DNA from: Haliotis rubra
Taxonomy: Eukaryota
Length of the DNA: 64,000 nucleotides
Reading direction: 5' to 3'
Assembly (NCBI RefSeq): GCF_003918875.1
Contig: NW_025766002.1
Location: forward strand, 7,936,001-8,000,000
Both the position numbers and the translations under genes were made by a program. The notes beneath the pieces are model-generated. The model worked only from the letters and a program-made list of their open reading frames with translations. It was not told the DNA's origin and did no database searches. This document shows positions 3,226 through 64,000 of this stretch, one piece after another (position 1 is the stretch's first letter; every line of letters begins with the position of its first letter).

Positions 3226-3899
3226 GGATCTACATCGGAGCCAGCGTGTTGACAATTGTATGTATGGGGATTGACCGGTACTTTGCCATCAGACATCCTA
3301 TGATACACCGACGAATCTTCACTGTTGGGAAGGTGAAAATCCTTGTCGGACTTACATGGCTGCTAGCGGCGGGTGTGATGGTCCCTTTGGCCATCGTACG
3401 TCAACTACGCGTACATACCATTGAAGCGTTCAGTCTAAAATTTTGCACGGAACAGTGGCCGAGACAACAGGACCGACAGATATACGACATCTTCTTATTG
3501 TTTTTTATCTACATCATTCCTGGGAGCATGATAGTGCTGTTGTACGCTCTAATGGGATGTAAACTGTGGCGGCGTGACGCCAGCCTTAAACGTCAGAATT
3601 CCTGTATGAATAACGAGGCCAAGGTCATGTTAAGCCGACGTCGCCTGGCGCTGATGATGATAATCATTTCTGTGTTGTTTGCGGTGTGTTGGTTGCCGTA
3701 CTATATCTTCAGCATATGTATGGACTTTGATCAGTCCATGCAGTATAATCTAATAACACTATATCCTTTCACCCTGTTGCTGGGCCATACGAACAGTGCA
3801 CAGAACCCTATACTGTACTGCTTCATGCATAGAGGATTTAAGACGTGTATTTTGAGGATTATCAAGTGCCAGTGCAGCAGGATTCGATCCGAAAAACAG
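3226..3899 (+). CDS. Class A neuropeptide GPCR, main exon (TM3-TM7, helix 8); QRFP/NPFF/orexin-like subgroup
   Basis: tgcag| acceptor and CAG|gtacgt donor; DRY, TM4 Trp, ECL2 CTEQWP, CWLPYY, NSAQNPILY. The TM1 exon(s) lie upstream of the window. Confidence 0.95.
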
Positions 3900-3919
3900 G
3901 TACGTTGTTTAGATATTAT

Positions 3920-4148
3920 TATTTGTTGTTTAACGCCGCACTCAGCAATAGTCCAGCTGTGTGGCGGCGATCTAGATAATCATGTCTGGACCGAACAATC
4001 CAGTGACTGAGCATAAGCATCGATCAACAGCATGCACATCAATCTATGTAATTGGGATACAATGACATGTGCCCATCCGATCCCGTTAGTCGCCTCATAC
4101 AACAAGCATGGGTTACTGAAGACCAATTCTAACTTTCAACTTCACGGA
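3920..4148 (-). mobile_element. SINE-like family B copy
   Basis: Matches the approx. 250-bp family B consensus (cccatgcttgtcgtaagaggcgactaacgggatcgggtggtcagg...). Confidence 0.85.
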
Positions 4149-45265: not shown

Positions 45266-45347
45266 TCACGTCTTCTCACTGAATTCTGCAATAACGGCCA
45301 GAAAGGAACCTGCATCACTCTGTTTGTCCTTCTCCTTAGTCTCGGGC
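45266..45347 (-). CDS. Death-fold locus, probable last coding exon
   Basis: ttttgtttcgcctaag| phase 2; (W)PETKEKDKQSDAGSFLAVIAEFSEKT-stop. An alternative acceptor at 45416 would give an immediate TGA. Confidence 0.55.
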
Positions 45348-45350
45348 CTT

Positions 45351-45595
45351 AGGCGAAACAAAATCTACATCAACATTTTGACATATTTTACTTTTAGCTT
45401 TTTGACAGTTTTACCTCTAGGTAAAACAAACTATAAATCAATATTTTGACATATTTCACTTTCAGGTAAAACAAAATATTGATCAATATTTTGGCATATG
45501 TCACTTTTAGTCAAAACAAAATATAAAACACCATTTTGACATATTTTACGTTTAGATAAACAAAACATAAATCAGCCTTTTGACATATTGGTTTT
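45351..45595. repeat. Degenerate 45-bp tandem repeat (about 5 copies) filling the last intron
   Basis: Units start at about 45351, 45419, 45464, 45509, 45554 (aggtaaaacaaaata..atcaatattttgacatatttcactttt). Confidence 0.8.
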
Positions 45596-45687
45596 TAAAA
45601 AAAAATAAGAACTGCAGCTACGTTGTTTCGACTTAAATCTGGTCGAATGTATTCAACTAACTATACAAGAACATACATATCTCGTAC

Positions 45688-45812
45688 CACTTTCTTGTAC
45701 GGGTTATAATCCAGTTCTTCGTGTCGTTTTGCTCCAGTTGTTTCAGCGCTTTTAACAAGACACGAAGACCCTCGTGCCGATGCTGTGCCTTCTGTCGTAC
45801 TTTACAGAGCAC
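45688..45812 (-). CDS. Death domain 3, C-terminal half exon (125 nt)
   Basis: tttgcag| phase 0 to TG|gtac phase 2; VLCKVRQKAQHRHEGLRVLLKALKQLEQNDTKNWIITRTRKW. Confidence 0.82.
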
Positions 45813-46283
45813 CTGCAAACACAAGCCGTATCGTGCATCAACCAGTCAAAACAATAAAAGTTTATGTACTTAATAAAATCCTTATAAGCCAAGGCCATTA
45901 TAATTACATGTAGTTGTATAAAGACTTTGTATGCAGACAATACAACTGTGCTAAATAATTATTGATATCATCTACGAAAACAAAATGCCAAACATTGACG
46001 ATATCCCTGGATATCAAACCGTTTGCGAGCCCGAAACAAATTTTAAGCTGTAACACACCTCTGTATGTCCTGGGCGGTTTGGTAGCCTAGTGGTTACAGC
46101 GTTCGCTCGTCACGCTGAAGACCCGGGTTCAATTCCCCACATGCGTACAATGTTTGAAGCCCATTTCTGGTCTCCCCCGCTGTGATACTACTGGAATATT
46201 GCTAAAAGCGGCGTAAAACTAAACTCATTCACTTCTGTGTTTTCTAACACGCAGTGTTGTTTTGGCATATTACGAAAACTTAC

Positions 46284-46441
46284 TGTAAACAGTTGGAACT
46301 GTTGGCCGAAAGGATGCCGTTCCGACAATTCACAATGTTCTTGTGTCGTAAGGCCACATTCAATGCCGAGTGACTTGATATCAACGGCAAAATATTGGAG
46401 TATGTCGACCAGAAACACGTCTGACATTGGTCTCGATGCCT
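46284..46441 (-). CDS. Death domain 3, N-terminal half exon (158 nt)
   Basis: gtacag| phase 1 to ACA|gtaagt phase 0; ASRPMSDVFLVDILQYFAVDIKSLGIECGLTTQEHCELSERHPFGQQFQLFT. Confidence 0.85.
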
Positions 46442-46519
46442 CTGTACATATATATGCAAACATTGTGAGAATGGGTTCAAATTGGTTTCACACAGCATTA
46501 CAATATACCGGAACGGTCA

Positions 46520-47570
46520 AAGTAATTCCATCAATTTCATTATTTTCATGGAGTGATGTTTCGGTGTAGATTCTATCACCATGATCAAGCTAAAAGTGAC
46601 TACAACCAGGTGATAAGAAGAATTAAGGTTGTTCCAACAGCCACATGACCTCTATCATGAGCTTCATCACCTACACCATGCCTTCACCAACCTCAGCCAG
46701 TATCCCACTGAGAGGACCATCTCGGCCACACACCAGCCCAAACCCAAAGTGACCTAGTCTGAATCCACCACCATCAGAAACCAGAAGTGAAACTTCCCGT
46801 CCCGTAGATACCCGCATTGTTGAGCGTGACATCTCAACACCCAAGGAAGACAGCAAATCACACCTCTCAGATCACAAAGAAAAGTTCCCCAGCAAATATT
46901 TGAAAGCCATCGAAATCCGCCACCACAAACCTTTGATCAACAGAGACCAAGGCTATTAAATACCATCGGCCTACGAAGAGCTGATCAAGCTATAGACTTT
47001 ATCTATTAGCATCCTATCAGCTTGTCAAAAACGTGTTCTGGCTCCGTTGACCGCCTCCGTGGTGTAGTGGTTAGAGCGTCCGCCCGGAGAGCGGAAGGTC
47101 GCGGGTTCAATCCCAGACAGCGTTATACCAAAAGACGTTAAAATATGGTACTTGTTGGTCCCTGCCTGGCGCTCGGCATTAATGGGTACAACAAGGACTG
47201 GTCGGCTCGGGGTCAGTATAATGTGTCTGAGTGGGGTATTCATGCTTCACTGCGGCGTGTTATCCCAGCGAGCTAGCACTATAAAACCAACTTAAATCTG
47301 GGCTAGTACAAGCAGCCGCACATACACATACAGACGCATGCACGTCGTCATATGAGCGAAATATTCTCAAGCACGACATTAAACCAAATTTCACCTCACC
47401 TTACCTCCGTTGCTTGCACCTATATTTTTAAATGTGATGTTTGTCACAACATACTATGTACTTGTACATCTACTTACCTGGTTGTGGTCATTTTAACTTG
47501 ATAACGGTGTAAGAATCTACAATGGAACGTCGCTTTATGAAATAGACAAGAACATGTTATCCATAGTTCG
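46520..47570 (+). mobile_element. Penelope-like element relic (GIY-YIG endonuclease remnant with inverted 5' pseudo-LTR), intronic
   Basis: Remnant peptides ELHHLHHAFTNLSQYP, ETSRPVDTRIVE..KEDSKSHLSDH, AIEIRHHKPLINRDQGY; 46565-46610 is the reverse complement of about 47475-47520; hammerhead-like motifs at both ends. Confidence 0.78.
47051..47404 (+). mobile_element. SINE family C copy 2, nested in the Penelope relic
   Basis: Colinear with 32266-32615; TSD ctccgttg. Confidence 0.88.
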
Positions 47571-48391
47571 TCGTATGCTTCATTATAAAATTCATCAATA
47601 TTCTTTGCATCTGCGTCTGTACACAAGTCACCATTTGCACGTATCTACATGAATCTTAAGCATTACACATCTTTCTGGTTGATAAAAAAGTACAAGGAAC
47701 CTTTGGTTACTGATATTGGTCAACCAACTGAACAAACAAACAGCAGATTTACCACATTACTATTTTTGGTAAATAGCAAATAACCTTTATATATGTTGTT
47801 CTTCAACTAATTTTCAAATATATTTGAAAATAATTAGCTATCTGGTTTGTTGTTTGGTCATGCCGAAACGGAATGGCAAAAATGCTCTCTTAAATGTTCT
47901 TTGACACTTGATCTGTTTGAGTGAGTGAGTTTAATTTTACGCTGCACTCAGCAATATTCCAGCCATATGGCGGCGGTCTGGAAATAATCGAGTCTGGACC
48001 AGACAATCCAATGATCAACAGCATGAGCATCGGTCTGCGCAATTGGGAACCGATGTCATGTGTCAACCAAGCCAGCGAGCCTGACCACCCAATCCCGTTA
48101 GTCGCCTGTTACGACAAGCATGGGTTGCTGAAGGTACATTCTAACGCGGATCTTCACGGGTCGATCTATTTGTGTAAGTACGGCTAAGGCTAAACATGGC
48201 ATTACAGTGACCATTTGTAACGTGTTTTTCAGGATAACTGATTTTCATTAGCAATCCAATATCCATACAAGATTTTAAAGTAAGACTGAGTGTGTATGGT
48301 GAGAGCGTACATTGCTTGTCAATGCAGTCAGCAATGTTCAACAAAATAACTCAAACTAGAAGTGTATTGGAATATATTTTCGGTACATTAC

Positions 48392-48486
48392 CATTTTCAG
48401 TAATTTCTAACTTGAAATTCTGTGTCTTCAACCATTTACCGAAAGTCGTATTTGACCAGTTCTTTTCAAATGCCTCGGAGTTCAAG
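48392..48486 (-). CDS. Linker exon between death domains 2 and 3
   Basis: ctgtcacag| phase 2 to G|gtaatg phase 1; LNSEAFEKNWSNTTFGKWLKTQNFKLEITEN; phases fit both neighbours. Confidence 0.72.
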
Positions 48487-48792
48487 CTGTGACAGAAATG
48501 TGTTCAGTTGGTTTCTGGTTTCCTCGAAAACACGACCCCGTTACTTCCGGAATGCTGTAAATAGCTTACGAGGGATGAAATGAGAAATGAAATGGGATGA
48601 TAATGATGCTTGGGAAGACCTTGCATGTCTGCTTAATGCCAGGAAGAACTCAATACTCAATCTGTATAATCTGTAACAATCGGATCGGATGATTTGGCAA
48701 GTAAAAGAAATTCATAATGTATTTATCACAGTGCTGAAATGGTAAGCATGGTAGTCTACGTTTTTGTCAAGTTGAAATGTAAAATGCGTCAC

Positions 48793-48920
48793 CATTTCTT
48801 CAGATGATTCATAACTTGCTGTGCCGCAGACCGACATTCAGCCCGCATCAGGGCTTTGATCAGATCTTGGAGTCCATAGTCGGGTTTCCCAGCGTGACCT
48901 ATGATCCATTCCTGGAACAT
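48793..48920 (-). CDS. Death domain 2, C-terminal half exon
   Basis: tcttctag| phase 0 to TG|gtgac phase 2; MFQEWIIGHAGKPDYGLQDLIKALMRAECRSAAQQVMNHLKK (M..W...L..AL....R.. DD pattern). Confidence 0.85.
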
Positions 48921-48989
48921 CTAGAAGATCCCTCATAACATGACACTGTCGGCGAGTAAGTACCAGTTACAAAATCTCAATATTTATCC

Positions 48990-49053
<64 letters not shown>

Positions 49054-49405
49054 CGATTTCATTAGGAACAATCCACCTCTGATGGATTATTTTCTAAGTT
49101 GGGTGTACTAATGTTATTCATGAATATTCATGCTCCAGTGAATTAACACAAAATGAGAACTACAACGTAACTGCCAACAAAGATACGGCTCTTCAGTTTC
49201 ACGGAGAATGTTTGCTTACATATACTGTAAAAGGACAATGAGATGGCAATGGACAAAATTGATTATTCAAATTTTTTTGTACATCAACACGGTCGTGATG
49301 ACACTGGTAAATAGTGTCTGGGCACTAGATTAATACCAGGGACTGAAACAAAATGAAATTCTTGTGCAGATTGGAAGCATACAGTACAAAAAAAGAAATG
49401 CAAAC

Positions 49406-49554
49406 CTGTTTGCTTCTTCCGAGAGAATTAAACTGTAGATTGGTGACTAAATCCATGAGCTTTTCAACCGGTACACCAGCATATAGCCACACCTTCCACC
49501 ACGACTCAAACACGTCATTCGATAAAGTGTCCATCAGCGTGTCTCTGATATAAT
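49406..49554 (-). CDS. Death domain 2, N-terminal half exon
   Basis: taacag| phase 1 to CAG|gtttgc phase 0; YIRDTLMDTLSNDVFESWWKVWLYAGVPVEKLMDLVTNLQFNSLGRSKQ. Confidence 0.82.
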
Positions 49555-49813
49555 CTGTTAATTGACAATATCATAACCAAGGCGGTTCACTTAAACCAAG
49601 GTTAGTTACATAATGCTTACAGGTTAAGCCATTCCAACTCGAATATTTTAACTTTGATTTAGAACATGAATGTCATTTTCCCTTGCAGTACGTTGGTTTA
49701 TTTCTTGTTATTGACAAACGTTATTACTGACATGATTTCAAACAATTTATTCGTTTATTGTCTGAAGTGGCCGATCAGGGGGATGTATTTTGCAATTTTT
49801 TACTCACTCTTAA

Positions 49814-50861
49814 AGGTCACATGCAACGTAAAACACAACTTTGCAGATTCTGATACCTTTCGGTATGGACTTACCGAAACAAAGCGTCAAAAATGCAAAT
49901 TCAACTTATAAAGTTGAAAAATAACGCGATGAAAAAAAACGCGCGAAATCGGAGTTCAAACGTTTCACTAATTTTCCCCAGACTTTTCGGGGGAATACGG
50001 GTTTCAACAGCTGGCTGCGCTCATAGCACGTGCGCAGTGAAATAGGTTCGCGCAACTTGGAAGCGGGCTGTCTGGTGAATACTCGGTGAAGGCTTTGGTG
50101 TGAGCTAGTTTCATAATGTTTTGTTGATATATCACAGGCGCGAGCTTTTGTATGTTATGACAGTAAATAAACTGTTTATATAATTTCATTTGTCTATTTC
50201 ACCACACGTTCTTCTTACCGAGTCACTTTCTCAGTTCGATACTTAAAAGCAATGTCATTATTTAGAGTTGACACGATTTCTAACTGTGATATAGATATGT
50301 CGCTGTCACAGACAAAACTCAATGTCTGCCTGCCTGTCTGCTAATGACAATATTCAATACACAACTGCGATCACTGACCACATGCAATTTGAACTTAACA
50401 CCAATCAGGCTATACACCATAAACAAAACGCATTGATTTATGGCCCGAGTTCGGTCTCTGTCACATTATGTAATTACACAGACAGGCAGGTGTGATACTT
50501 GAACACATGACATGTTATGATGTCTGTTGATTGCAAAATGTTATACACAAAAAATGAGCATGTATTTACAAAACCCAACTTTCTATATATACACACACAA
50601 TGAGCCGTGAGGCGGCATCTGCTAATGAACCAGCCGTTACACTTGAGTGCACACCCACCCGCTCTGACTGGGTTCGGTATCCCGGCTGCTTCGTTTCGAG
50701 GGAGGTAAACCCAAGTACAAAATATTGCACTTTTGATTTGCGATTATACGCTTATAATTTTGTTTATTTGTTTTTTCATAATCAGCAATGCACATTATAT
50801 GTCATGAAGAAGTGATAATTGTGTTTTAATTATGTTTGATTTTTTTGGTTGCATGTGACCT
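49814..50861. mobile_element. Kolobok-like non-autonomous DNA transposon, copy 2 (1048 bp), intronic
   Basis: Perfect 14-bp TIR aggtcacatgcaac, TTAA TSD both sides, RR...YY termini (distinguishes it from piggyBac CCC...GGG). Confidence 0.9.
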
Positions 50862-50967
50862 TTAAGCTACTGGCATATGACTCAGATTAAAGTGATGCAC
50901 AACATTTTAATTGACTTTATTCATGAGTTAGAATCAACAACCACCAACAATGCTCCAGTTTACTTGC

Positions 50968-51512
50968 CTTCGATGTTCTCATGGCCATGTCCTTTGGCAG
51001 CACTTTCATCAAAATCAGCTTTCTGTACCACCGCCATGCTCTCCTTAGAGGTGACCTTCTGATCCAGTTCAAAAGGAAGATACGTTATTACATTTTTCTT
51101 TTTATCCATGATCGCTATAGCTGCGAGGGGGGTGTACTTTTCGTTCATGATTCCAAGATGCAGTGATTGAAAACCAGTCATCCCACGCTTGTAGATGAGC
51201 TTTAGTGTTGAAATGTCATACAATGACACTGCATTGCCACGGACACCGATACAATATATACTCGTAGCTTTGCCTTGGAATTCGCCACTGTTTCTGAGAC
51301 AGGAGTAACCTTTCTTCTGCCAGGTCTGTGATCTTTTCTTGAATTTTTTTCTGTGGCAGCATTCAACAACTACATCATGAACTGACGAATTAAGAAACTT
51401 GCCCCATGCAGCAAATATGACTTGATCCTTAACGCCCCTTTTGCGATGTACTTTAGTTTGCTTCTTAACCCTTGATCTTCGTGCGTTCTTTGTGTATTCA
51501 CCAACTACAACT
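50968..51512 (-). CDS. UPA-like domain exon (module 2)
   Basis: tttgtag| phase 2, open frame VVVGEY...QVIFAAWGKFLNSSVHDVVVECC...SGEFQGKATSIYCIGVRGN...ITYLPFEL...ENIE, ending G|gcaagt (GC donor, phase 1). Confidence 0.82.
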
Positions 51513-51725
51513 CTACAAACAAAGACAAAGAATCGTTCATGTAATATAATAACATAATTATTGTTCTGTATCCTTCTTAAGGTACTTCTCCGTTTATCTA
51601 GAAAAAATCCTTAAAATGAATTGAATAGGTCAAAGATAAGAAATAAGGCAACATATTCACTTGCAAAATTGAATCAACATATGATGTTTTAACAGAAACG
51701 AACGAATAACAAGTGTTGTCATTAC

Positions 51726-52042
51726 TCTGAAAAATGGTTTGTGGAAAAAGTTGCAACATTGCCGTTGACTGATATCACAGTATCAAGGATTGTCCAATAT
51801 GTTTCATTTTCATCCTCCTCATTTTCTCCTTTACTTTCCTCCTCTCTTTGCTCTTCACTTCCCTTTGGTACAGTTCTGGACAGAACGAGTAACTCCCCTT
51901 CCCCAGTATACTTGTCCGGAAGAGGTAGAGTCACGCTGAGGTTGTTCTGTGGTTGATGTCCTGATGTGTGGCTTATGGTATAAAACATGGACAGCGATAT
52001 TATGCTCTCAAGGTCGTTTCCGTCATATTCCATTTCCACGGC
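51726..52042 (-). CDS. Second ZU5 domain C-terminal exon ending in an HFS motif
   Basis: ctgaag| phase 0 to GA|gtaat phase 2; ...SLSMFYTISH...LSVTLPLP...ELLVLSR...WTILDTVISVNGNVATFSTNHFSE. Confidence 0.85.
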
Positions 52043-53139
52043 CTTCAGTAAAAGACATGTATTAGTCAGTATGATAGAAAGCGAAAAACATTTCTATAAA
52101 CCAAGCGAAACTATAACACGACACAACTATGCGATTCTTATCTTATGTATTTATGCATCAATGTCAAATAGCCATGAGGCCGTGTGAGGTAAGACTTTTC
52201 TGCCCCATCAGTGGCACTCCTGATCAGCACGTCACGCAAAGTGAAATACGTTGTTTATCTGGGCTGGTTATAACAGGCTATATTTCACAGACATCTCCAC
52301 ATGTCCCCCACAAAACTTTTGGAAGGCTTCAATGATGCCTTCCTTGAATGTTGAAACCCCGGTAAAAAGTTCTTTTGAAGATAAGTGAGTGAGTTTAGTT
52401 TTGCGCTGAAATCAGCAATATTCCTGCTATATGGCCGTAGTCTGTAAATAATCGAGTCTGGACCAGACAACCCAGTGATCAACAGCATGAGCATCAATCG
52501 TGAACCGATGACATGTGTCAACCAAGTCAGCGAGCCTGACCACCCGATCCCGTTAGTCGCCTCGTATGACAAGCATGGGTTACTGAAGACCAATTCTAAC
52601 CCGGATCTTTCCGGGTCACTATGACACTCCATGATATCTTAGCAGAAAGAGCTTTATATTTTACCTACATCTAGACAACGAGACTGGACTTCTTGCCTTG
52701 TCATATATAGTGTTGGGGAGAGGTTTTTCACTCTAAATATGACACATATGAGGCTGTTTCATTGGTCTCTTTATATTTCTAGTTCAAGGAAGGAGGAAGG
52801 AAATATATGGCTATGTGACGATTATTGTTTGTGTGTTTGTTTGTTGCAATACGCAGTACTCTACATATATGATAGACTAACAACTAGTCTCTGAAACGAA
52901 CATATTTTACTGAAGAAAAAGTTCATAGTAAAAATAAATAAAACATAATGAAAAGGAGCCCTGAGACTTTCTACATTTTCAGAAGCTGTGGAAATCTAGA
53001 CTTGCCACATTTGCTAGACTTTGCGTGGGCTTTCTTGGATATATTTGCTTCAGGGTCTGTACGAGAGATTACATATATGACTGCGGTATGTATATATTCC
53101 ATCGAGTCTTGGCCAGACAACGCATGTGATCGAGACCAG

Positions 53140-53576
53140 GGCCCCGTTTCACAAAGCGATCGTAGCGCTAAGGTGATCGTAACTCCCATACTTTAACATA
53201 GACTTACGACAGTCGTAGCTTGACTGTGTGGACTTTACATCTGCAAGGGACTCGCATTATCACGCAACCAATCTGAAAGATCTGTTCTCCAGCGTGAGCG
53301 CTCATCTGATACTGAACTACCTGAGGGAAGTTGATCTATATCATAAATTGTAACTGTGTAATGTCACTGTGTAATTTACCTGCTTTTCAATTTAGTGCTA
53401 TGACATTCTCTCTTCCAAAATGACAATGTAATGAATGTGTGTCTTTGAAACGAAACCACTTTATATTAATGCAGACTTGTTCTCGTCACTATATGGCTGG
53501 AATAATGCCGATGTGACGTAAAGCCCAACTCAACTCAACTCAACGTAGCGCTACGATCGCTTTGTGAAACGGGCCC
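53140..53576. mobile_element. PIF/Harbinger-like MITE inserted in a SINE B copy
   Basis: About 31-bp TIR gg.cccgtttcacaaagcgatcgtagcgcta, 3-bp TSD cag; a diverged relative lies at about 4220-4320. Confidence 0.8.
53221..53544 (+). mobile_element. 5'-truncated I/Nimb-group LINE 3' end nested in the MITE
   Basis: 53222-53353 reads DCVDFTSARDSHYHATNLKDLFSSVSAHLILNYLREVDLYHKL-stop (typical I-group ORF2 C-terminus); 3' UTR ends gctggaataatgccgatgtgacgtaaagcc(caact)n; short TSD cgtagc. Confidence 0.75.
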
Positions 53577-53998
53577 CAGGAGATAGAGTAACTGGCATCA
53601 TCAGCATCCATGCAAATGGTATACGATGACCTGCATCAACCAGGTCAGCGAGCCCGACCATCAGATCCCGTTAGTCATCTCTCACAGCAAGGTTGGGCTG
53701 CTGATCTTCACAGGTCTGACCATTGTTGCATTATATTTGATAATACTTGAACATAGGTATTGAGATTCGTCTTGGACGAATGTTGACCAGCACTTTCGAT
53801 TCACATAAAGAAACAGATCTGCAAGGTGGGCACAGCTCATGCCTATAAAATTTACCTATTGGGGCTTTAGGTCTGCCTTTTCAAATAACTTTTATAATAT
53901 TATAATGATGATATAATAGTATAATATTTAAGTAGTAAATTCATACGTATACTACACATGTCCGTGTGAATCATATACGATTTGACTTAATACATTAC

Positions 53999-54187
53999 CT
54001 TAAGAATCATGCTTCCTGGGCATTCGAATGCGTTCTTTGGAATGTGTATTTGTACCCTTTCATCCAGTTCGTAAACAACCGTACATCCATCAACTGGTAC
54101 TTCCGTCAGAGTTTCCTTCGGCCTCGTGCACAACACAAACCATCCCCGAGGACCGACAGTGATCTGAGTTGTTGCTTCCCAGCGTTG
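53999..54187 (-). CDS. ZU5-1/ZU5-2 junction exon
   Basis: gattcag| phase 0 to AAG|gtaatg phase 0; QRWEATTQITVGPRGWFVLCTRPKETLTEVPVDGCTVVYELDERVQIHIPKNAFECPGSMILK, resembling the PIDD1/DTHD1 inter-ZU5 segment. Confidence 0.85.
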
Positions 54188-54674
54188 CTGAATCAACAGA
54201 AATGTTTACAACTGAAGAAGAATTTGCTGGTAGAACAGCCAGGTGTGCGTGTTGCACGTGTGAAAATTGAAATCTCACAACATACGCTTGTTGATTACCT
54301 GGCTGTTCTACCAGCATGTGGTCCCTCGTCGGAAAAAATCGCGAAAAGTGACAACAAAGTAATGACCGTTTGTTAAACAACTTTTTTTTATTCGGGTGTC
54401 CAAAATTTATTCGGGTGTCTGAGACAAGTCATCAGAGTTGGTCTGTCGATTTCATGTGACTGTGCCAAATTTGCTTTTGAAGCGTTGATTAGATTTTGTG
54501 TTAGTGAGCAATTCATCGGTCTCAAACAGACTGTTGTCAAAAATGAAAAAAAGACAATGGAAATATTAAGAGGAATAATATTTATACGAAAGAAATATGT
54601 CATAACCTCATTTTAAGAGTTTTAATGTTCCATGGACCAGGGGAAGTGTTGACTCTGTAAAATGTTATCCTTAC

Positions 54675-55155
54675 CCGTTCTTGTATGAATACTGTGTCAA
54701 CCGGAGCTTCTTCCTGTTTATGTCCAATTGTTGCATATCTTAAAATTAGCTCAGAATACCGACCAGGTCCTTCCTCTAAATGGAACACTATTGCAAAATC
54801 AATACTGGGAGTGGATATGCACCATTCAATGAGATCTCCAAAAAATGCTTCATCCATCTTTGCAACAAGTCCGTATGGGTTATCTTCTGGCTCAGAGTAC
54901 GTTAGTCGTAAGAAGGTCTTCTCAGCACCAACTCGTTTTTGCACACCAAACCTGATGTCCACATTCCTCAGAGATGCCTCTTTGAAATTTGTTGTCTCAA
55001 TGTACGTTGTGTTCCTGCAATAGACATCTTGTTTGATATTATCACTCGCCGTGAAGGAATACCAATTGGTATCGGCCTTCTCCTTCTTATGAGTGGCTGG
55101 TGCTACCAGCAAAACAGGACACGCTGACCCTTTTAGTGAACACCTGGTGTCATCA
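54675..55155 (-). CDS. First ZU5-containing exon of module 2 (5' boundary uncertain)
   Basis: Long open frame ...DEAFFGDLIEW...YSELILRY...IQER|gtaagg (phase 0). Candidate acceptors at 55155 or 55143 (phase 2), or 55238 (which includes an in-frame TGA at 55169-55167). Confidence 0.7.
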
Positions 55156-56022
55156 CTGAATGTCAGTCATCCAAATGATATACAGTCGTAGCTGAATATT
55201 TTCTGATCTGTCAACTTGACATCCATACTTATTGAGATCTAAAGGTACAAATGGTAAGAGAGGAGATATATAGTTCGGGAGGTCATTGCTCGATGACACT
55301 GTAAATGTACATTGTGTGACGTTGCACATATGAACCAGATGCCAATCTGATTGACGTCCAAAGTGAATGAACGTGTAATGTGAAGAGTGAACGATTTGCT
55401 TTCTGTGCATATCCCAGCGTGTCAGGTTAATGCTGGTAGAAAATCAGAAATGATGCAGGTTTTAGATGTCCACCTGTATGGTGCTGACATATCTATAAGT
55501 ATACTATATATTAAAAAACCAAGATCACAGGTTTCGGGCGCACCCAGGGGACACAACTCTCTCTACATCGTAAACTACTGGGCCATCCCACTGGTTAGTG
55601 AATTCGAAGAAGATCAAAGACAATTACCAGTTTGCTGAAGCCAATGAGCTTAGGTATATCGTTCAAATGTCATTAACTGGGTGTGGTGATTCAACCTACA
55701 ATTAAGCATGTGTAAGAATGTCACCACTGAATCAGTTTCCTTGAGGAAGATCAGAAATTATTTAACTGTGTTAAAATACGTGTGTGTGTGTTTGAAAGGT
55801 AGTGTTTATAATATATAGTGGCGCTGAGCAGTAGAGCACACATAAAACGCTGCATTTTTCACACGAGGCAAATGATAAGAAACAAAATCATGTGTCGATG
55901 AAGTTAGACCAGAGCTTGTCCTCAATGTGATGGGACACATGGCATCCTTGAACCTTTTATGAACCTTTGCTATTTCTACACGCCTATCTTTCAATATTGT
56001 CGGATGTCTGCAGTTAACATAC

Positions 56023-56133
56023 CTGTAATCACCTGGTGGGGTGATCAGTCCTTGTCCTTTGAAATCGTTTACAAAAGAAGAGAGCTCTTTTGCAAATGTT
56101 TCATCATCTTCATCAGGTGTAGAAACAGCTAAC
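56023..56133 (-). CDS. Post-death-domain-1 exon (may instead run on to the stop at 55806)
   Basis: cctttcag| phase 2 completes a Trp codon; LAVSTPDEDDETFAKELSSFVNDFKGQGLITPPGDY; strong donor AG|gtatgt. Confidence 0.72.
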
Positions 56134-56852
56134 CTGAAAGGTATATAACGCTGCAAATGTGTTCACTGGTGATCATAATATGAAGTTATAAAACAGAGAA
56201 ATATCTATGATAATGTTTTGTGATGTAAAGTAAAATGTTCATCATTTCTTGTAAGGGGTGTGATGAACTTATATTATTATATAAGAGTATATTATTCTCC
56301 TGGTTTAGAGTTGAACTCGAAAACCTGAAGACATGTTACTTCCTTACTATACTGAATACTTATACCAAAGCTGCATATGAAGAAGAGAGGTTTTATGGGT
56401 GTCAACTTCTTTATTATTCTTTCTAAATGCCATTCAAAGACCTGCATATGAAATGTTGGACTTCCTAACATGATGACATCTATGTGAAATTTGGGTATAG
56501 GACATTTGGGTTGCAGGTTGGTCATTTTCAATCGTACCATATGTTCCGATGATTTTCAGGTAAATAATTGATTTTCCTTCGCATGTGTTTGTGACTAATG
56601 CCACATGTGAGGCAGGATAAGCTTACCTCTCCGCGAAAGCCGGGTATGATCTCTATTTGATAATAGTCGTGCTTACATATTGTGCAACTGTAAAATTTAC
56701 TGATTATGGAAATGGCTTTGTTTTTATGTACTTCAGCTGATATGAAGTGTTATACACTGGTCTGAAAGCCCCAAGAACAGACACGTTATGGTATAGCTGA
56801 AATATTATTCGGAATGGGATTATAATTTTACATTTCAGTCATTCATACTTAC

Positions 56853-56977
56853 CAGTGCCTGATGTTCTCAACCAGCAAGAGTTTGACGTTATTCTGTTGG
56901 ACTTTACCGAGAGCTACGACAAGTGTCTTCAAGAAGGTCGCGTTGTCCCTTTCCTTTTCACGACATTTGTCCAACAT
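56853..56977 (-). CDS. Death domain 1, C-terminal half exon (125 nt)
   Basis: atttcag| phase 0 to TG|gtaagt phase 2; MLDKCREKERDNATFLKTLVVALGKVQQNNVKLLLVENIRHW. Confidence 0.85.
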
Positions 56978-57649
56978 CTGAAATATCGTTTATCCACTTA
57001 ACCATTCAAACTGCATGGTAAAGCTTGAAGGTGTCAATGCAGCTGTCTGGGCCTCGCGGACGAAGAGGAAGACTTAGATCCGGATTAACAAATATACAGT
57101 ATTGCTGAACTATACGTAATGAAGTCAAGGAATATTATAGTAACACAGTCATGTGTGGACAATGCGTGAAGTTATTAACAAGAATACCCCTACCTGTAGT
57201 TCCAGCCCTTCAATACGTACATTGATGTAAAACGAACTTAATGGTGTTCCTGCAGATGTATCACAACTTTAGATATGTGTTGGCCATAACCAAACATATA
57301 CTGGCATAAGACATTTAACATGTGTGGGATGTAATAATGCATATCTATACTGCGCTCGTTTCCACGCTTGCCGCATGATCAAGGCGCAATGTAAACAATT
57401 ATGTATGTCAAGTAATAGTTTCAGCTGAAGTTACCATTTTGTGAGAAGAACAGGCTAAATGGGTGACCATTGAAGTTGCACTTTGTTCATGATCTGCTTA
57501 CGTAACATACAGTGTTATGTTACAGTGGTCAACAAGTTATTCAGCGAACAAGACTCATATCTTAGATGAACATATGTTGAGAATCTGAAATATACCCAGC
57601 ATAAATAGTAAAACATCTTTGCCAAAGGAAATACAAGTTGATCATTGGC

Positions 57650-58140
57650 CAGTTGTGGAAAGTTCTCACCATAAACCTACTGTATTCTGTATCTGTACAG
57701 TTGTGGAAAGTTCTCACCATAAACCTACTGTATTCTGTATCTGTACACGATGTGGAAAGTACTCCCCATAAACCTACTGTATTCTGTATCTGTACAGTTG
57801 TGGAAAGTACTCACCATAAACCTTCTGTATTCTGTATCTGTACAATTGTGGAAAGTACTCACCATAAACCTACTATATTCTGTATCTGTACAGTTGTGGA
57901 AAGTACTGACCATAAACCTACTGTATTCTGTATCTGTACACGATGTGGAAAGTACTCCCCATAAAACTACTGTATTCTTTATCTGTACAGTTGTGGAAAG
58001 TACTCACCATAAACCTACTGTATTCTGTATCTGTACAAGATGTGGAAAGTACTCACCATAAACCTACTGTATTCTGTATCTGTACAGTTGTGGAAAGTAC
58101 TCACCATAAAACCACTGTATTCTGTATCTGTACAAGATGT
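57650..58140. repeat. 48/49-bp tandem repeat (10 copies) spanning an exon-intron junction
   Basis: Unit cagttgtggaaagtactcaccataaacctactgtattctgtatctgta; the minus strand contains ATG|GTGAGT. Confidence 0.95.
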
Positions 58141-58262
58141 GTAGTCACAGATGCGTTTTATTTCATCATCACTTAAACCAAGTTCTTTAAATAACGTAAT
58201 GTCAGGTGTCATATCCTTAACAACACTGACAAAGAAGCTGTTTAGAACATGCCTTCTGTTTT
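58105..58262 (-). CDS. Death domain 1, N-terminal half exon (158 nt)
   Basis: tatttgcag| phase 1 to ATG|gtgagt phase 0; NRRHVLNSFFVSVVKDMTPDITLFKELGLSDDEIKRICDYTSCTDTEYSGFM. Confidence 0.85.
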
Positions 58263-58795
58263 CTGCAAATACAAAAATGTATATCGGCAGAGGTATAACC
58301 TTATAGTTACTTGTGCATAGTGCACCACACATTGTAAAATACATTCTGGACATATTTGAATTTTATATTATTTTAACTTCTATATAGTATTAGCTGCGCA
58401 GAAGAACCCGGAGAACCCAAACACAGATATTATGTAGAATTCTTCTGGAAAGGAAATAGTCAACTCTCTGCCAGGAATATTTCCGCAGAGTTTAAGACGA
58501 ATGCATTTCAAACACATGTGTACTTTTACTTAAAGGGTCGTCGTTTTCATTGCATAGCACCGGTGTTATATTGGCTCGTATCTGTATTATTGTTGAATGT
58601 AACGACCAACACCAAGAAACAAACATTACACAGACAAAATTAGTATCACAGCAGTGGAACACAAGTTTACATACTGTCAGTACTTTGATAGTACATAATA
58701 TAGCGTAGCAATGGTTTTGATATATAATATCCAGATGCATATTTGAAATTGTAATTAGTACGCAGCCTTGTTTCTTAGTTTGCCACAATAAATGC

Positions 58796-58854
<59 letters not shown>

Positions 58855-59424
58855 TATATATATAAATTTATATAACACTTCTTCGATACAAAGTTCTATG
58901 TGATTCAGCCAGTCATGTTGCTAACGATATTGAGTATTTCCACAGTGAAAGTTTGGATATTCACTTCTCAATATTAGTTTATTAGTTTTGAATTGCAAAG
59001 CAGTAAAACATATCCCTTGTATTGGTTTATAATTTTTGAAATGTCAAACATATTGTATGGGGCTATATCTAACAACAGTACATAATAGTTTCTGAACATA
59101 AAAGACTAGAACATAAATTCCAGTCCAAAATTCTACTTCCATTAATGCCAAAGTGAGGCCTAAAGGTAAGTTAACCGCGATGTCTATTACATCTATATAA
59201 TTACACGAATTTCCACCTACACGCTTCAACGTCATCATTAGGGAGAGATTACAGTTACAGATCTTGTGTATAAAGATACGAAGTGTAGCCGTGTACACAC
59301 ACACTCCTACTCGTTTCAACTTCATCTTCTGAGTGAGGAACACCAGGGAGAGACTGTAGTTACATAACTGTGTTGTGTTCGTATTGTGTCATTATTTGTG
59401 TCATGGATCTATTACATATCTTAC

Positions 59425-59869
59425 TGTTCATAGGCCAAGGAGCTTCAACTCTGGGAGACGCCTCAATCTCAGCTATCAGCGGAAGAGGCAGCTGCGTGAC
59501 GAGGCGAGACTTGTGATCCCCAGCTGTATAAATGTTAATGCATCCACAAAGAGATGCATCCTTGCATTGTGATACTTCAACAAGGAGGCTGCGGTAGTTC
59601 GCTTCTCTTGGCGTCCGTTCTAGATGGTCATTATATTCTCCAAGAAACTCATACTTGCCTTCTACTTGAAAACGATAGCTTTGCCTCTCTAATGAAGCAA
59701 ACTTCCCGCTCACAGCTAGAGTTACGAATGATTTTTGTTTCCAATCGTCGAGACAAAGATAGATTTCATTTGGTTCCAGGCATCCAACGATAACTTCGTA
59801 CCGATTAACTCCAATAACCTTCCCAACAACAAAGAAGGTCACAAAACAGTCAGTCATACTTGTTGTCAT
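59425..59869 (-). CDS. UPA-like domain exon (module 1), possible start codon at 59869
   Basis: FVTFFVVGKVIGVNRYEVIVGCL...WKQKSF...SGKF...YRFQVEG...VTQLPL aligns by eye with the module 2 UPA; donor A|gtaaga phase 1; acceptor ctttcag| at 59907; gccATGa context. Confidence 0.78.
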
Positions 59870-59914
59870 GGCACCGCCGCCCTTTGGTCGCCTTTACTTG
59901 TGTATGGCTGAAAG

Positions 59915-60758
59915 ATCATATAAGGATGTATCATGTAAGGATGTATCATGTAAGGATGTATCATGTAAGGATGTATCATGTAAGGATGTATCATGTAAGG
60001 ATGTATCATATAAGGATGTATCATGTAAGGATTATCATATAAGGATGTATCATATAAGGATGTATCATGTAAGGATGTATCATATAAGGATGTATCATGT
60101 AAGGATGTATCATGTAAGGATGTATCATATAAGGATATATCATATAAGGATGTATCATGTAAGGATGTATCATGTAAGGATGTATCATGTAAGGATGTAT
60201 CATGTAAGGATGTATCATATAAGGATGTATCATGTAAGGATGTATCATGTAAGGATGTATCATATAAGGATGTATCATGTAAGGATGTATCATGTAAGGA
60301 TGTATCATGTAAGGATGTATCATGTAAGGATGTATCATGTAAGGATGTATCATATAAGGATGTATCATGTAAGGATGTATCATGTAAGGATGTATCATGT
60401 AAGGATGTATCATGTAAGGATGTATCATTTAAGGATGTATCACGTAAGGATGTATCACGTAAGGATGTATCAGGTAAGGATGTATCATGTAAGGATGTAT
60501 CATGTAAGGATGTATCATGTAAGGATGTATCATGTAAGGATGTATCATCTAAGGATGTATCATGTAAGGACAGATCATATAAGGATGTATCATGTAAGGA
60601 TGTATCATGTAAGGATGTATCATATAAGGATGTATCATGTAAGGATGTATCATGTAAGGATGTATCATGTAAGGATGTATCATGTAAGGATGTATCATAT
60701 AAGGATGTATCATATAAGGATGTATCATGTAAGGATGTATCATGTAAGGATGTATCAT
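59915..60758. repeat. 15-bp minisatellite, about 56 copies
   Basis: Unit tcat(g/a)taaggatgta. Confidence 0.98.
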
Positions 60759-61935: not shown

Positions 61936-64000
61936 GGTGTCATACTTCACAACTATATAATTTAGGTTGTTGAAGTAATATATATCTCAGCATGGGGTAT
62001 ACGCGTTATGTGAGAGGGTAGAAGGTTATCTCTGCAGACAAGGAAGTTTTACATAAAGACTATTTGACCGAAGCATTGTCAGCCAACTTCTTTTAACATC
62101 AGATCATAAGCTGTGTTTGGTAGTGCGTAAGCCAGTGGAGACAGACAGTTAACTTACTAACAGCATCAAAGTGGATTCTGGCTAGAACTGCCTCCCATTT
62201 ACTTATGTGTTTTATTGATGAGTTGACTAAATGGATCGATCGATGCTCATGCTGTTGATCACTGGATTGTCTGGTCCAGACTCTATTATTTACAGATAGA
62301 TGAAATATTTCTAACTGCGGCTTTAGACAGCAACCAACCAACCAACTAAATGAGTGAGTGGGTGAGTTTAGTTTTACGCCGCACTCAGCATTATTCCACC
62401 TATTTGACGGCAGTCTGGACCAGACAATCAAGTCATGAACAGCATGAGCATCGAGCTACACAGTTGGGATACGATGACATGTGACAACCAAGTCAGCGAG
62501 CCAATTATCCATTTCTGGAACCTCTTCGATCTGAAAATATGATTTGGGAGCAGTGTCATTTTTGCTAAATTTGACGATAATTTGTGGCGATGAATAGAAA
62601 TTACATACAGGATACAGGAGTCTAGATGAATGACAACAGGTGGCTTTGTCCATTAGTCGTAAGGTTACTGCTTCGTCTGTCTTGCGGGAGTACAGATTAG
62701 ATACCATAAGTTCATCCTACATCAAGTGAGTGAGTGAGTGAGTGAGTTAAGTTTTATGCTGTGATCAGCAATATTCCAGCTATTTGGCGGCGGTCTGTAA
62801 ATAATCGAGTCTGGACCAGACAATCCAGGGATCAACAGCATGAGCATCAATCTACGCAACTGGGATGCGATGTCATGTGTCAACCAAGTCAGCGAGCCTG
62901 ACCACCCGATCCCGTTAGTCGCCTCTTACGACAAGCATGGGTTGCACGAGATCAATTCTAACCCGGATCTTCACGCGTACCAACTAAATGGATCGAGTAG
63001 ATTGACATGGTGGTTAGGTTGTTTGCGTGCCATTGAAGCCAGAATACGTAGGTGGAAACTCATAATATCAATCACTGGTATGGATAATGCAGAATCAGCT
63101 TTGTAAAGGTGGTTGATAGAACACACGTAAGTAGTGAGCGAGAGGTTTTATGCTTTTAGCAATGCTCCAGAACAGCGCGACCTCAGAAATGGGTTTCACT
63201 TATTGTACCAATGTGGGGAATCGAACCCGGGTCTTCAGTGCGACGAGATAACGCTTTAACCACATGGCTACCCCACCGCTCCACACACATAAAAACTGAC
63301 TTTGTAATCTTGAGTTTGTAGTGCATCCGTCTTACACCAGTATTATTTGTTATGTGACATCAAGTCATTTCCCAAATGAATGTATAGTTTAAATGAACTA
63401 AAAACGAGTTGAAGAAGTTTCAGTCTCTTTTAATAACTGACAAGAACCTTGAAACCCAGATCAAGTAAACAGTTTAATCATACTTCTGGTACTTCCTGTA
63501 TTTTGCGCTGCGTATTTATCAAGGGAAGTCACTTACTAAAATATCAATAGTCACACATACTATCGATGTATCAAAAGTTTTTCGTTTCTACCGTCGATTA
63601 ATTGCTATCGGAGATTCAACAATTGCAATCCATCAATAGTTCGATGAATCTTTACATCACTACACACTCACAGGCCCTCGTGTCTTTTCGAGGATTAAAG
63701 ATGTTAAGAAAAATGTAAAAATAATAGAGATGATCCCCCGTCTCGAAATGCTACACAGTACAATCCTAGTACTATATGATATGTATTGTACTGTGTAGCA
63801 TCTCTCTGTGTCTGTCTGTCTGTCTGTGTGTGTTGGGTTGAAATATTTCTACATGTCCACCATTTCATGAACAAAAATATAGTGTTGTTTTGTCTAGACA
63901 AGAATACGCTTGCTCTATTCATCATACATTACATTTCTACAATTTAATTTGTAACAAAATGAAAAATATTGTTTTGTTTCTAACATTAGAATATACTAAT

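What the first reader, a model, noticed from the sequence alone, without database searches (positions are those of the whole stretch)
45266..59907. Hidden multi-exon PIDD1/DTHD1-like locus: UPA-DD + ZU5-ZU5(HFS)-UPA-DD-DD with three death domains
Seen: 14 minus-strand exons, many invisible in the ORF track, chain together with compatible splice phases and no stops. Established: ZU5-ZU5-UPA-DD is the supramodule of PIDD1, DTHD1 and ankyrins, normally with a single DD. Inference: this is a lineage-specific death-fold signalling scaffold with no LRR or ankyrin repeats visible in the window, tandem C-terminal DDs and a repeated UPA-DD unit, plausibly an invertebrate PIDDosome-like innate-immune or apoptosis platform. 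Domain calls are by motif recognition, not HMM.
Basis: partly seen in the sequence, partly recalled or inferred. Interest (0 to 1): 0.75.

Follow-up and report, generated by a model that had tools for sequence, protein, structure and literature searches.

The report
Abalone UPA-DD/ZU5-ZU5-UPA-DD-DD chimeric gene
A real 14-exon abalone gene encodes a 988-residue protein in which an extra UPA plus death-domain unit is fused in front of an ankyrin/PIDD-type ZU5-ZU5-UPA module with two death domains; it is a fast-evolving, lineage-restricted relative of known cell-death scaffolds, and its function and expression are untested.

Summary
Observation confirmed. Fourteen minus-strand exons (45266-59869) join in frame into a 2967-nt, 988-aa ORF. 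Twelve introns are GT-AG and one is GC-AG.

The locus is syntenic in Haliotis asinina and H. rufescens. dN/dS is 0.41 against each, and no exon carries a stop. RefSeq models there use the same junctions. The H. rufescens 432-aa model is reproduced only by e1-e2-e3-e4-e5-e7, with identical exon lengths.

Single exons give no Pfam hit. An 863-aa paralogue is colinear with e5-e13. Its AlphaFold models match ankyrin-B ZU5-ZU5-UPA-DD (Foldseek E 1.6e-11; UPA Z 17.5). All three death domains are supported by Pfam or by PDB profile hits, with PIDD's DD the best match.

New points:
- Full-length relatives carry N-terminal ankyrin repeats.
- e1-e4 is a partial copy of the upstream neighbour's 3' end, fused onto a 5'-truncated paralogue.
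- Both other species have 1-nt frameshifts (in e5 and in e7), and H. rufescens has lost the HFS serine.
- No RNA data were available.

Verdict: a new variant of a known kind, of moderate interest. The scan had already noted two sub-features of this locus on this same window.

The parts
59425..59869 (-). Exon e1: first coding exon (ATG 59869-59867), complete UPA-like core (N-terminal UPA)
   Evidence: Open in three species. It is 44% identical to the UPA region (435-566) of the 914-aa ANK protein P0008 (E 1e-34). The H. rufescens RefSeq CDS starts in this exon (MHKQ...). The conserved acceptor TTTCAG ends at 59908. The ancestral ATG is lost here (ATA) and a TAA lies at 59896-59894.
58105..58262 (-). 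Exon e2: first half of death domain 1 (helices 1-3)
   Evidence: Acceptor TTTGCAG|AA is phase 1 and the donor is ATG|GTGAGT. It is 51% identical to P0008 800-848. Its length of 158 nt equals e12. The orthologue P0001 gives Pfam Death E 0.0048.
56853..56977 (-). Exon e3: second half of death domain 1
   Evidence: It is 54% identical to P0008 844-889. Its 125 nt and phase-2 donor CTG|GTAAGT are the same as e13. Read-through would give W followed by a stop.
56023..56133 (-). Exon e4: linker, probably a recruited former terminal 'tail' exon
   Evidence: It is 111 nt in both the window and H. rufescens. It is weakly similar to the family C-terminal tails (WL...F...ITPP; z 4.3-4.6). It is joined to e3 and e5 in the RefSeq models of two species.
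54675..55014 (-). Exon e5: ZU5A-like beta-sandwich
   Evidence: It is colinear with P0004 134-276 (E 6e-19). The corresponding part of the P0004 model matches ankyrin-R ZU5A (3kbt_D Z 5.8, 3f59_A Z 5.0; Foldseek prob 0.99-1.0).
53999..54187 (-). Exon e7: N-terminal half of ZU5B
   Evidence: It is 48% identical to P0004 256-324. The junction FIQER|QRWEATT is colinear with P0004 without a gap.
51726..52042 (-). Exon e8: C-terminal half of ZU5B, ending in HFS (51736-51728)
   Evidence: It is 52% identical to P0004 332-417, including KHFS. The model region matches ankyrin-R ZU5B (3ud2_B Z 6.9, 132 aa aligned, 21% identity) and the ZO-1 ZU5 domain. dN/dS is 0.29.
50968..51512 (-). Exon e9: basic linker plus UPA domain; GC-AG donor
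   Evidence: It is 40% identical to P0004 419-582. That region of the model matches ankyrin-B UPA (Z 17.5, rmsd 2.1 A over 121 residues), NLRP1 FIIND UPA (Z 14), CARD8 (Z 12-13) and UNC5b (Z 10-11). The donor AAG|GCAAGT is used in XP_067679671.1.
48793..49554 (-). Exons e10 (49554-49406) and e11 (48920-48793): death domain 2
   Evidence: Orthologue P0002 residues 302-371 give Pfam Death at 24.5 bits, above the cut-off of 22.6. All four PDB hits of profile A4 are DDs: Fas, PIDD, PIDD-CC and Tube.
48392..48486 (-). Exon e11b: linker between DD2 and DD3
   Evidence: Matches P0002 376-408. It is conserved in H. rufescens with a 4-aa deletion.
45688..46441 (-). Exons e12 (46441-46284) and e13 (45812-45688): death domain 3
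   Evidence: Paralogue P0004 757-824 gives Pfam Death E 0.002. All 11 PDB hits of profile A3 are DDs, the best being the PIDD DD 2of5_H at E 0.03 over the whole domain.
45266..45347 (-). Exon e14: C-terminal tail and TGA stop (45268-45266)
   Evidence: Matches P0002 504-528 at 72% identity.
57650..58140 (-). 48-bp tandem repeat (10 copies) that begins inside e2 and repeats its 3' end with the donor
   Evidence: Found by TRF. H. asinina has one copy. A second in-frame donor at 58057 would add 16 residues.

Best explanation
The locus is a real protein-coding gene of an abalone. Other agents' notes name the genome as Haliotis rubra; I did not verify this. Its intact 988-aa ORF reads UPA - DD1 - linker - ZU5A - ZU5B(HFS) - UPA - DD2 - linker - DD3 - tail. 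It belongs to a gastropod-restricted family whose full-length members are ANK repeats - ZU5 - ZU5 - UPA - DD (P0008 type) or - DD - DD (P0004 type). That is the ankyrin/UNC5/PIDD 'ZU5-UPA-DD supramodule', diverged beyond the reach of sequence HMMs.

Origin (inferred). A partial tandem copy of the 3' end of the upstream P0008-type neighbour (UPA, DD, tail exon) was fused by splicing onto a P0004-type copy that had lost its ANK exons. The former tail exon e4 became an internal exon.

Mechanism (inferred, not shown). The protein would act as a death-fold oligomerisation scaffold. The HFS at the ZU5B-UPA junction could allow PIDD/UNC5CL-type autoproteolysis and release a UPA-DD-DD fragment. UPA would promote clustering of that fragment, and its DDs would recruit DD adaptors. 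The N-terminal UPA-DD copies the shape of such a cleaved fragment and may act in cis as a partner or brake.
For: Gene model: 14 exons, 988 aa, no internal stop.

Conservation: the locus is syntenic, and every exon is open in H. asinina and H. rufescens. dN/dS is 0.41 overall and below 1 for every module, including e1-e4 (0.53 and 0.48; p 0.004 and 2e-4).

Junctions: RefSeq P0001 joins e2-e3-e4-e5-e7. The H. rufescens 432-aa model is reproduced only by e1-e2-e3-e4-e5-e7 with the same exon lengths, and it starts at an ATG in e1. P0002 confirms e8 to e14, including the GC donor. P0004 is colinear with e5-e13.

Folds: Foldseek's top hit is 4d8o, the ankyrin-B ZU5-ZU5-UPA-DD tandem (E 1.6e-11). UPA scores Z 17.5, ZU5B Z 6.9 and ZU5A Z 5-5.8.

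Death domains: Pfam Death hits and PDB profile hits that are DDs only.

Duplication: e1/e2/e3 are closest to P0008 (44-54% identity). e2/e3 and e12/e13 share lengths and phases. A P0008-type ANK gene lies just upstream in both other species.
Against: No RNA evidence. The only runs holding this DNA are genomic contigs.

The orthologue has a 1-nt deletion near the end of e5 in H. asinina and a 1-nt deletion in e7 in H. rufescens, where HFS is also HFY. The full-length reading frame is therefore not maintained across the genus.

In this species the ancestral start codon is lost and a TAA precedes the next ATG.

e5 differs from a roughly 96%-identical genome by 8 nonsynonymous and 4 synonymous changes.

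The ZU5 regions of the models have low pLDDT (28-60), and they are models of a paralogue, not of this protein.

No Pfam ZU5 or UPA hit was found in any family member.

Autoproteolysis and all partners are inference.
Confidence: 0.6

Rival explanations
1. There are two products rather than one. A short N-terminal protein (UPA-DD with e4 read through, or UPA-DD-ZU5A) and a separate C-terminal protein (part of ZU5B-UPA-DD-DD, started at an internal Met such as MEYDG in e8) would be the real gene products. On this view the in-frame continuity in this species is only the unbroken ancestral state.
For: RefSeq splits the locus into 253 + 528 aa in H. asinina and 432 + 317 aa in H. rufescens. The frameshifts in both species fall between the two halves, yet the downstream exons stay open with dN/dS 0.25-0.58. 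If the e3 or e4 donors were skipped, the frame would end after W, or after 71 more codons.
Against: No in-frame ATG precedes ZU5A in e4 or e5, except one in mid-domain. The Met in e8 is absent in H. rufescens (AVDIEY), and a start there would cut ZU5B in half. The RefSeq models do splice e3-e4-e5-e7. The paralogue P0004 reads straight through the same junctions.
Confidence: 0.22
2. It is a decaying, birth-and-death copy: a chimeric duplicate on its way to becoming a pseudogene, still open in this species by chance.
For: Independent frameshifts occur in two congeners, and the HFS serine is lost in H. rufescens. The ancestral start codon is lost here. A tandem repeat has expanded into e2. dN/dS is fairly high at 0.41, and e5 shows near-neutral change against the closest genome. 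No expression evidence exists.
Against: There is no stop in about 970 aligned codons in any of three species at dS 0.26-0.50. dN/dS is significantly below 1 in every module. All 13 splice-site pairs are intact. All 12 listed indels in a fourth genome fall in introns.
Confidence: 0.15
3. It is an orthologue of a canonical bilaterian gene (ankyrin, UNC5 or PIDD1) that has merely been mis-split.
For: It has the same ZU5-ZU5-UPA-DD order, and the best structural match is ankyrin-B. The best DD match is PIDD.
Against: No Pfam ZU5 or UPA hit and no PDB sequence hit for the ZZU profile. An all-database HMMER search with the UPA exon found only 8 proteins: Haliotis proteins, unnamed ENA or Logan calls, and one spurious beta-propeller protein. 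There are no ANK, LRR, Ig or TSP exons in the window. A published search found no PIDD in lophotrochozoans (PMC11463336).
Confidence: 0.03

Closest known systems
Ankyrins (ANK1-3): ANK repeats + ZU5-ZU5-UPA-DD (ZZUD; PDB 4d8o, 3ud1/3ud2, 6m3q)
   Same: Same domain order of ZU5A-ZU5B-UPA-DD. Full-length paralogues (P0004, P0008) also begin with ANK repeats. Ankyrin gives the best fold matches (Foldseek E 1.6e-11; UPA Z 17.5; ZU5B Z 6.9 at 21% identity).
   Different: The paralogues have only about 3-4 ANK repeats and this locus has none. The locus has a second C-terminal DD and an extra N-terminal UPA-DD. HFS is retained at the ZU5B-UPA junction. There is no detectable sequence-HMM similarity. 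Spectrin-binding features were not tested.
PIDD1 (LRR + ZU5-ZU5-UPA-DD, autoprocessed at two HFS sites; PIDDosome with CRADD and caspase-2)
   Same: It has the ZU5-ZU5-UPA-DD core. An HFS motif sits exactly at the ZU5B-UPA boundary, which is the position that yields PIDD-CC (UPA-DD). PIDD's DD is the best solved-structure match to the DD1/DD3 profile (E 0.03).
   Different: It has no LRR. The first HFS site is absent. It has two tandem DDs plus an N-terminal UPA-DD. Orthology is not supported. Cleavage and CRADD binding are untested.
NLRP1 / CARD8 FIIND (ZU5-UPA-CARD)
   Same: The UPA fold matches at Z 12-14 with rmsd 2.6-2.7 A. The logic is the same: a self-cleaving ZU5-UPA junction releasing a UPA plus death-fold fragment whose UPA promotes oligomerisation (PMC7794386).
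   Different: The death-fold domain is a DD, not a CARD. The motif is HFS rather than SF|S. There is no NACHT/LRR or DPP9 context.
UNC5 receptors and UNC5CL (ZU5-UPA-DD; ZU5-DD with HFS)
   Same: Shares the cytoplasmic ZU5-UPA-DD module (3g5b: Z 10-11 for UPA). UNC5CL also uses HFS autoproteolysis (from my own knowledge, not tested here).
   Different: There are no ectodomain or transmembrane exons. ZU5 is duplicated, and the DDs are in tandem.

Membership tests
ZU5-UPA-DD supramodule proteins (ankyrin/UNC5/PIDD class) | ZU5 beta-sandwich fold(s) | tested here: met
   Tested on the colinear paralogue P0004, not on the joined window protein. ZU5A region: 3kbt_D Z 5.8 and 3f59_A Z 5.0. ZU5B region: 3ud2_B Z 6.9 (132 aa, 21% identity) and the ZO-1 ZU5 domain Z 5.5. 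Foldseek 4d8o E 1.6e-11 over 448 columns. Model confidence is low there (pLDDT 28-72).
ZU5-UPA-DD supramodule proteins (ankyrin/UNC5/PIDD class) | Match to the Pfam ZU5 and UPA sequence models | tested here: not met
   No ZU5 or UPA hit at E<=0.1 in P0001-P0008, and none at E<=1 in single exons. The family profile A1 gave no PDB sequence hit at E<=10.
ZU5-UPA-DD supramodule proteins (ankyrin/UNC5/PIDD class) | UPA fold directly after the last ZU5 | tested here: met
   P0004 445-573 (colinear with e9 at 40% identity) matches ankyrin-B UPA at Z 17.5, rmsd 2.1 A over 121 residues. It also matches NLRP1, CARD8 and UNC5b UPA at Z 10-14. pLDDT is 77-90.
ZU5-UPA-DD supramodule proteins (ankyrin/UNC5/PIDD class) | Death domain C-terminal to UPA | tested here: met
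   Pfam Death scores 24.5 bits (cut-off 22.6) in orthologue P0002 302-371. P0004 757-824 gives E 0.002. Profiles A3 and A4 hit only DDs in the PDB.
PIDD1 | N-terminal leucine-rich repeats | tested here: not met
   No LRR Pfam hit in any exon or relative. The relatives carry ANK repeats instead.
PIDD1 | Two HFS autoprocessing sites (after ZU5A and after ZU5B) | tested here: not met
   Only one site is present. NHFS lies at the end of e8 (51736-51728). The ZU5A-ZU5B junction reads FIQER|QRWE with no HFS. Actual cleavage cannot be tested here.
PIDD1 | Orthology or sequence relationship to PIDD1 | tested here: not met
   The only link is DD-level similarity (E 0.03). The HMMER search of 1.84 billion representatives with the UPA exon found no PIDD. 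The literature reports no PIDD in lophotrochozoans (PMC11463336).
Canonical ankyrin | Long N-terminal ANK-repeat membrane-binding domain (24 repeats) | tested here: not met
   tblastn of the paralogue ANK regions against the window finds nothing (best E 2.9). The paralogues have ANK hits only within about residues 6-110.
NLRP1/CARD8 FIIND | ZU5-UPA followed by a CARD | tested here: not met
   The domains after UPA are DDs. No CARD hit was found.
DTHD1 | Sequence or architecture match to DTHD1 | not tested

The most novel reading that the evidence does not exclude
The family would be the lophotrochozoan functional stand-in for PIDD1. On this reading it is a self-cleaving ZU5-UPA scaffold whose released UPA-DD-DD fragment nucleates a DD assembly. 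Partners would include the CRADD-like DD-only genes that other agents of this scan report as expanded in the same genome. In this chimeric member, the built-in N-terminal UPA-DD would act as an intramolecular decoy or brake that mimics the cleaved product.
Probability: 0.1. Interest if true: 0.8.

Novelty: new variant of a known kind. Interest (0 to 1): 0.52.

Why it matters
ZU5-UPA plus death-fold modules are the core of ankyrins, netrin receptors, the PIDDosome and the NLRP1/CARD8 inflammasomes. A published survey found no PIDD in lophotrochozoans (PMC11463336).

This locus shows that abalones, and at least one other unidentified organism (ENA ERZ25071447), have a divergent ANK-ZU5-ZU5-UPA-DD(-DD) family that Pfam does not recognise as ZU5 or UPA. 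One member has been rebuilt by partial duplication and exon fusion into a protein with two UPA domains and three death domains. Tandem DEDs and tandem CARDs are well known. Tandem DDs behind a UPA, together with an extra N-terminal UPA-DD, form an unusual architecture.

If the gene is expressed and cleavable, it gives a testable entry point into mollusc cell-death and immune signalling. It would also be a natural experiment on how UPA and DD copy number affects assembly.

The value is tempered. The orthologues are frame-broken in two species, and there is no expression evidence.

Tried and rejected
- Pfam on 17 single-exon or intronic ORFs gave nothing relevant at E<=1.
- phmmer of e8 against PDB sequences gave nothing.
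- ESM Atlas feature search with e5 and e1 scored 0.77 to phage or bacterial hypotheticals and was uninformative.
- The word search with e1 gave no hit in the 97-310 aa range.
- The region search with P0004 134-600 found only its H. cracherodii orthologue.
- The family profile A1 against PDB sequences gave no hit at E<=10.
- RNA evidence: no RNA run holds the stretch. The three runs found are genomic contigs about 96% identical, covering introns, with no splice joints.
- Two attempts to rebuild the H. asinina 528-aa model failed. One timed out and one found no solution, because I had not yet found exon e11b. tblastn later resolved this.
- My first dN/dS run had e5 and part of e9 in the wrong frame. 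It was redone.
- Rejected: e6 (54093-54428) as an exon.
- Rejected: an ANK exon anywhere in the window.
- Rejected: conserved coding exons in 59.9-64 kb. That stretch holds only repeats and stop-ridden conserved DNA.
- Rejected: rescue of the H. asinina frameshift by its alternative e7 acceptors (reasoned).
- hhalign of DD3 against DD2 profiles gave only 3.6% probability, so the two DD types are not close paralogues.
- It was not sent to any search, family scan or folding tool. Exons were searched by reference, and domains were tested on orthologues and paralogues by id.

Full report
**1. What is in the sequence**

The window is eukaryotic (GC about 0.39, one 288-N gap). Stop-to-stop frames on the minus strand between 45.2 and 59.9 kb contain a series of long open segments. 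None of them alone hits a Pfam family at E<=1. A phmmer search of e8 against PDB sequences and two language-model Atlas searches were also blank.

A word search with the 188-aa e5 frame found one protein, P0001. It is a 253-aa 'uncharacterized protein' of Haliotis asinina, 75% identical. Its locus L001 is syntenic with the window: about 77-86% nucleotide identity through exons and introns, with every candidate exon conserved. The window is therefore abalone DNA. Notes of other agents of this scan name the genome Haliotis rubra; I did not verify this.

**2. The gene model**

I used splice consensus, conservation and tblastn of the RefSeq proteins P0001, P0002 and P0005. From these I defined 14 exons and checked them in a script.
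- The CDS is 2967 nt and 988 aa, with one terminal stop and all phases compatible.
- Twelve introns are GT-AG.
- The e9 intron has a textbook GC donor (AAG|GCAAGT), also used in XP_067679671.1.
- The long frame at 54093-54428 is intronic: 54% identity, and a stop in H. asinina.

**3. Is it coding, and is it one gene?**

Conservation and constraint:
- Against H. asinina (dS 0.26) and H. rufescens (dS 0.50), dN/dS is 0.41 overall (p 6e-14 and 5e-19).
- dN/dS is below 1 in every module, including e1-e4 (0.53 and 0.48).
- No exon has a stop in any species.
- In a fourth genome, about 96% identical, all 12 listed indels fall in introns.

Junction support from RefSeq models:
- P0001 joins e2-e3-e4-e5-e7.
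- P0002 (XP_067679671.1, 528 aa) joins e8 through e14.
- In H. rufescens a 432-aa model begins at an ATG (MHKQ...) directly after the e1 acceptor. An exhaustive search over nearby splice sites reproduces exactly 432 aa with the chain e1-e2-e3-e4-e5-e7. The only other solution uses weaker e1, e3 and e4 sites. The exon lengths 158/125/111/340 equal those of the window.

So NCBI's models in two species link the N-terminal UPA-DD unit to the ZU5 part. No RNA run holding this DNA was available. The three runs found are genomic contigs. The junctions therefore remain unconfirmed by reads in this species.

**4. Lesions**

- H. asinina has a 1-nt deletion 13 codons before the e5 donor. This is why RefSeq splits the locus into 253 + 528 aa.
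- H. rufescens has a 1-nt deletion in e7 that gives a stop. This is why the split there is 432 + 317 aa. Its HFS reads HFY.
- In the window species the frame is intact. However, the ancestral MHKQ start is ATA and is followed by an in-frame TAA. The next ATG (59869) is conserved with H. rufescens and keeps the whole UPA core.
- e5 shows 8 nonsynonymous and 4 synonymous differences from the closest genome.

This looks like a fast-evolving, birth-and-death type of gene.

**5. Domains**

A HMMER scan of 1.84 billion representatives with e9 found only 8 proteins. Five are Haliotis RefSeq proteins or ORF calls from an unnamed ENA assembly; one is a Logan contig; one is a spurious beta-propeller protein.

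P0004 (XP_067686927.1, 863 aa, on another chromosome) has ANK repeats. It is then colinear with e5, e7, e8, e9, e10, e11, e12 and e13, without gaps at the exon junctions. P0008 and P0010 (914 aa, ANK) are colinear with e7, e8, e1, e2 and e3.

AlphaFold models of P0004 134-600 and 252-590 have mean pLDDT of about 59. The UPA part is confident (77-90) and the ZU5 parts are poor. Matches were:
- Foldseek ranks the ankyrin-B ZU5-ZU5-UPA-DD tandem first (4d8o, E 1.6e-11). AnkB/AnkG ZZU, UNC5b, ankyrin-R ZU5A-ZU5B and NLRP1 FIIND follow.
- UPA: Z 17.5 (rmsd 2.1 A over 121 residues) to ankyrin-B, 14 to NLRP1, 12-13 to CARD8 and 10-11 to UNC5b.
- ZU5B region: Z 6.9 to ankyrin-R ZU5B (132 aa, 21% identity) and 5.5 to the ZO-1 ZU5 domain. 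GAIN domains score about 6.
- ZU5A region: Z 5-5.8 to ankyrin-R ZU5A.

Death domains:
- DD2: Pfam Death is above threshold in P0002 (24.5 bits).
- DD3 type: E 0.002 in P0004.
- DD1: E 0.0048 in P0001.
- The DD1/DD3 profile hits 11 PDB sequences, all DDs, led by the PIDD DD (E 0.03, whole domain).
- The DD2 profile hits Fas, PIDD, PIDD-CC and Tube DDs only.

The caveat is that the ZU5 calls rest on low-confidence models of a paralogue, and that Pfam's ZU5 and UPA models do not see the family.

**6. Origin**

e1 is 44% identical to the UPA of P0008. e2 and e3 are 51-54% identical to its DD. In both other species a P0008-type ANK gene lies 6-8 kb upstream of e1.

e2/e3 and e12/e13 have identical lengths (158 and 125 nt) and phases. 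e4 weakly resembles the family's terminal tail exon.

e5-e14 match the P0004 type but lack its ANK exons, and there is no ANK anywhere in the window.

The simplest reading is a partial tandem duplicate (UPA, DD, tail) spliced onto a 5'-truncated P0004-type copy. This would have happened before the three species diverged.

Both subfamilies also occur in an unidentified eukaryotic ENA assembly (ERZ25071447) at 30-47% identity, with no nucleotide similarity. The family is therefore older than the genus.

**7. Mechanism and comparison**

Shown: the domain order, and HFS at the ZU5B-UPA junction. HFS is kept in the window, H. asinina, P0004 and P0013. It is lost in H. rufescens and in the P0008 type.

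Inferred: PIDD/UNC5CL-like autoproteolysis releasing UPA-DD-DD. UPA-assisted oligomerisation, as described for NLRP1 and CARD8 (PMC7794386, cited in PMC11874512). Recruitment of DD adaptors.

The locus works like, but is not a member of, PIDD1 (no LRR, one HFS site, no orthology), canonical ankyrin (no long ANK array) or FIIND proteins (DDs, not a CARD). A survey reported no PIDD in lophotrochozoans (PMC11463336), which gives the family some interest as a possible analogue.

**8. Verdict**

It needs three corrections: the relatives carry ANK repeats, the locus has a chimeric origin, and the orthologues are frame-broken. It is a new variant of a known kind, of moderate interest.

Noticed in passing
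window 57650-58140: A 48-bp tandem repeat (10 copies, 92% matches) starts inside exon e2 and repeats its last codons together with the GTGAGT donor. H. asinina has a single copy. Because 48 nt is 16 codons, the second donor (58057) is in frame and would insert 16 residues between helices 3 and 4 of DD1. Later copies lie beyond a stop. The scan already noted this repeat as a separate finding.
   Followed up: partly
window 59915-60758: A 15-bp tandem repeat (ATCATGTAAGGATGT, 56 copies, 95% matches) lies directly upstream of the conserved e1 acceptor. It creates long spurious ORFs on both strands.
   Followed up: no
window 50968/50967 (e9 donor): A GC-AG intron with a perfect AAG|GCAAGT donor, conserved in H. 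asinina and used in its RefSeq model. A GT-only exon chainer would miss this junction.
   Followed up: yes
window 47893-48108, 52288-52638, 62725-62925 and many other places; L001 several copies: A dispersed SINE-like repeat. It translates to '...GLSGPDSIIYRPPP..WNIAECGVKLNS...' and occurs in several introns of the gene and in its flanks, in both orientations, in both species.
   Followed up: no
window 394-1116 (-) and 3195-4010 (+): A 240-aa ORF that looks like a Tc1/mariner-type transposase, and a 271-aa ORF that looks like a rhodopsin-type GPCR exon (DRY-like and NPxxY-like motifs by eye). Neither is related to the finding.
   Followed up: no
L004 and L005 (ENA ERZ25071447 ctg86416, ctg85724): An unidentified eukaryotic assembly carries both subfamilies. 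One locus is P0008-like, with ANK, ZU5A, ZU5B and UPA exons. The other is P0004-like, with ZU5B, UPA and DD2 exons. Identity is 30-47% at protein level, with no nucleotide similarity to Haliotis. The family therefore predates the genus.
   Followed up: partly
window 49746-50863: About 1.1 kb of the e9-e10 intron has no counterpart in H. asinina, where the equivalent stretch is about 108 bp. It is probably an insertion in this lineage.
   Followed up: no
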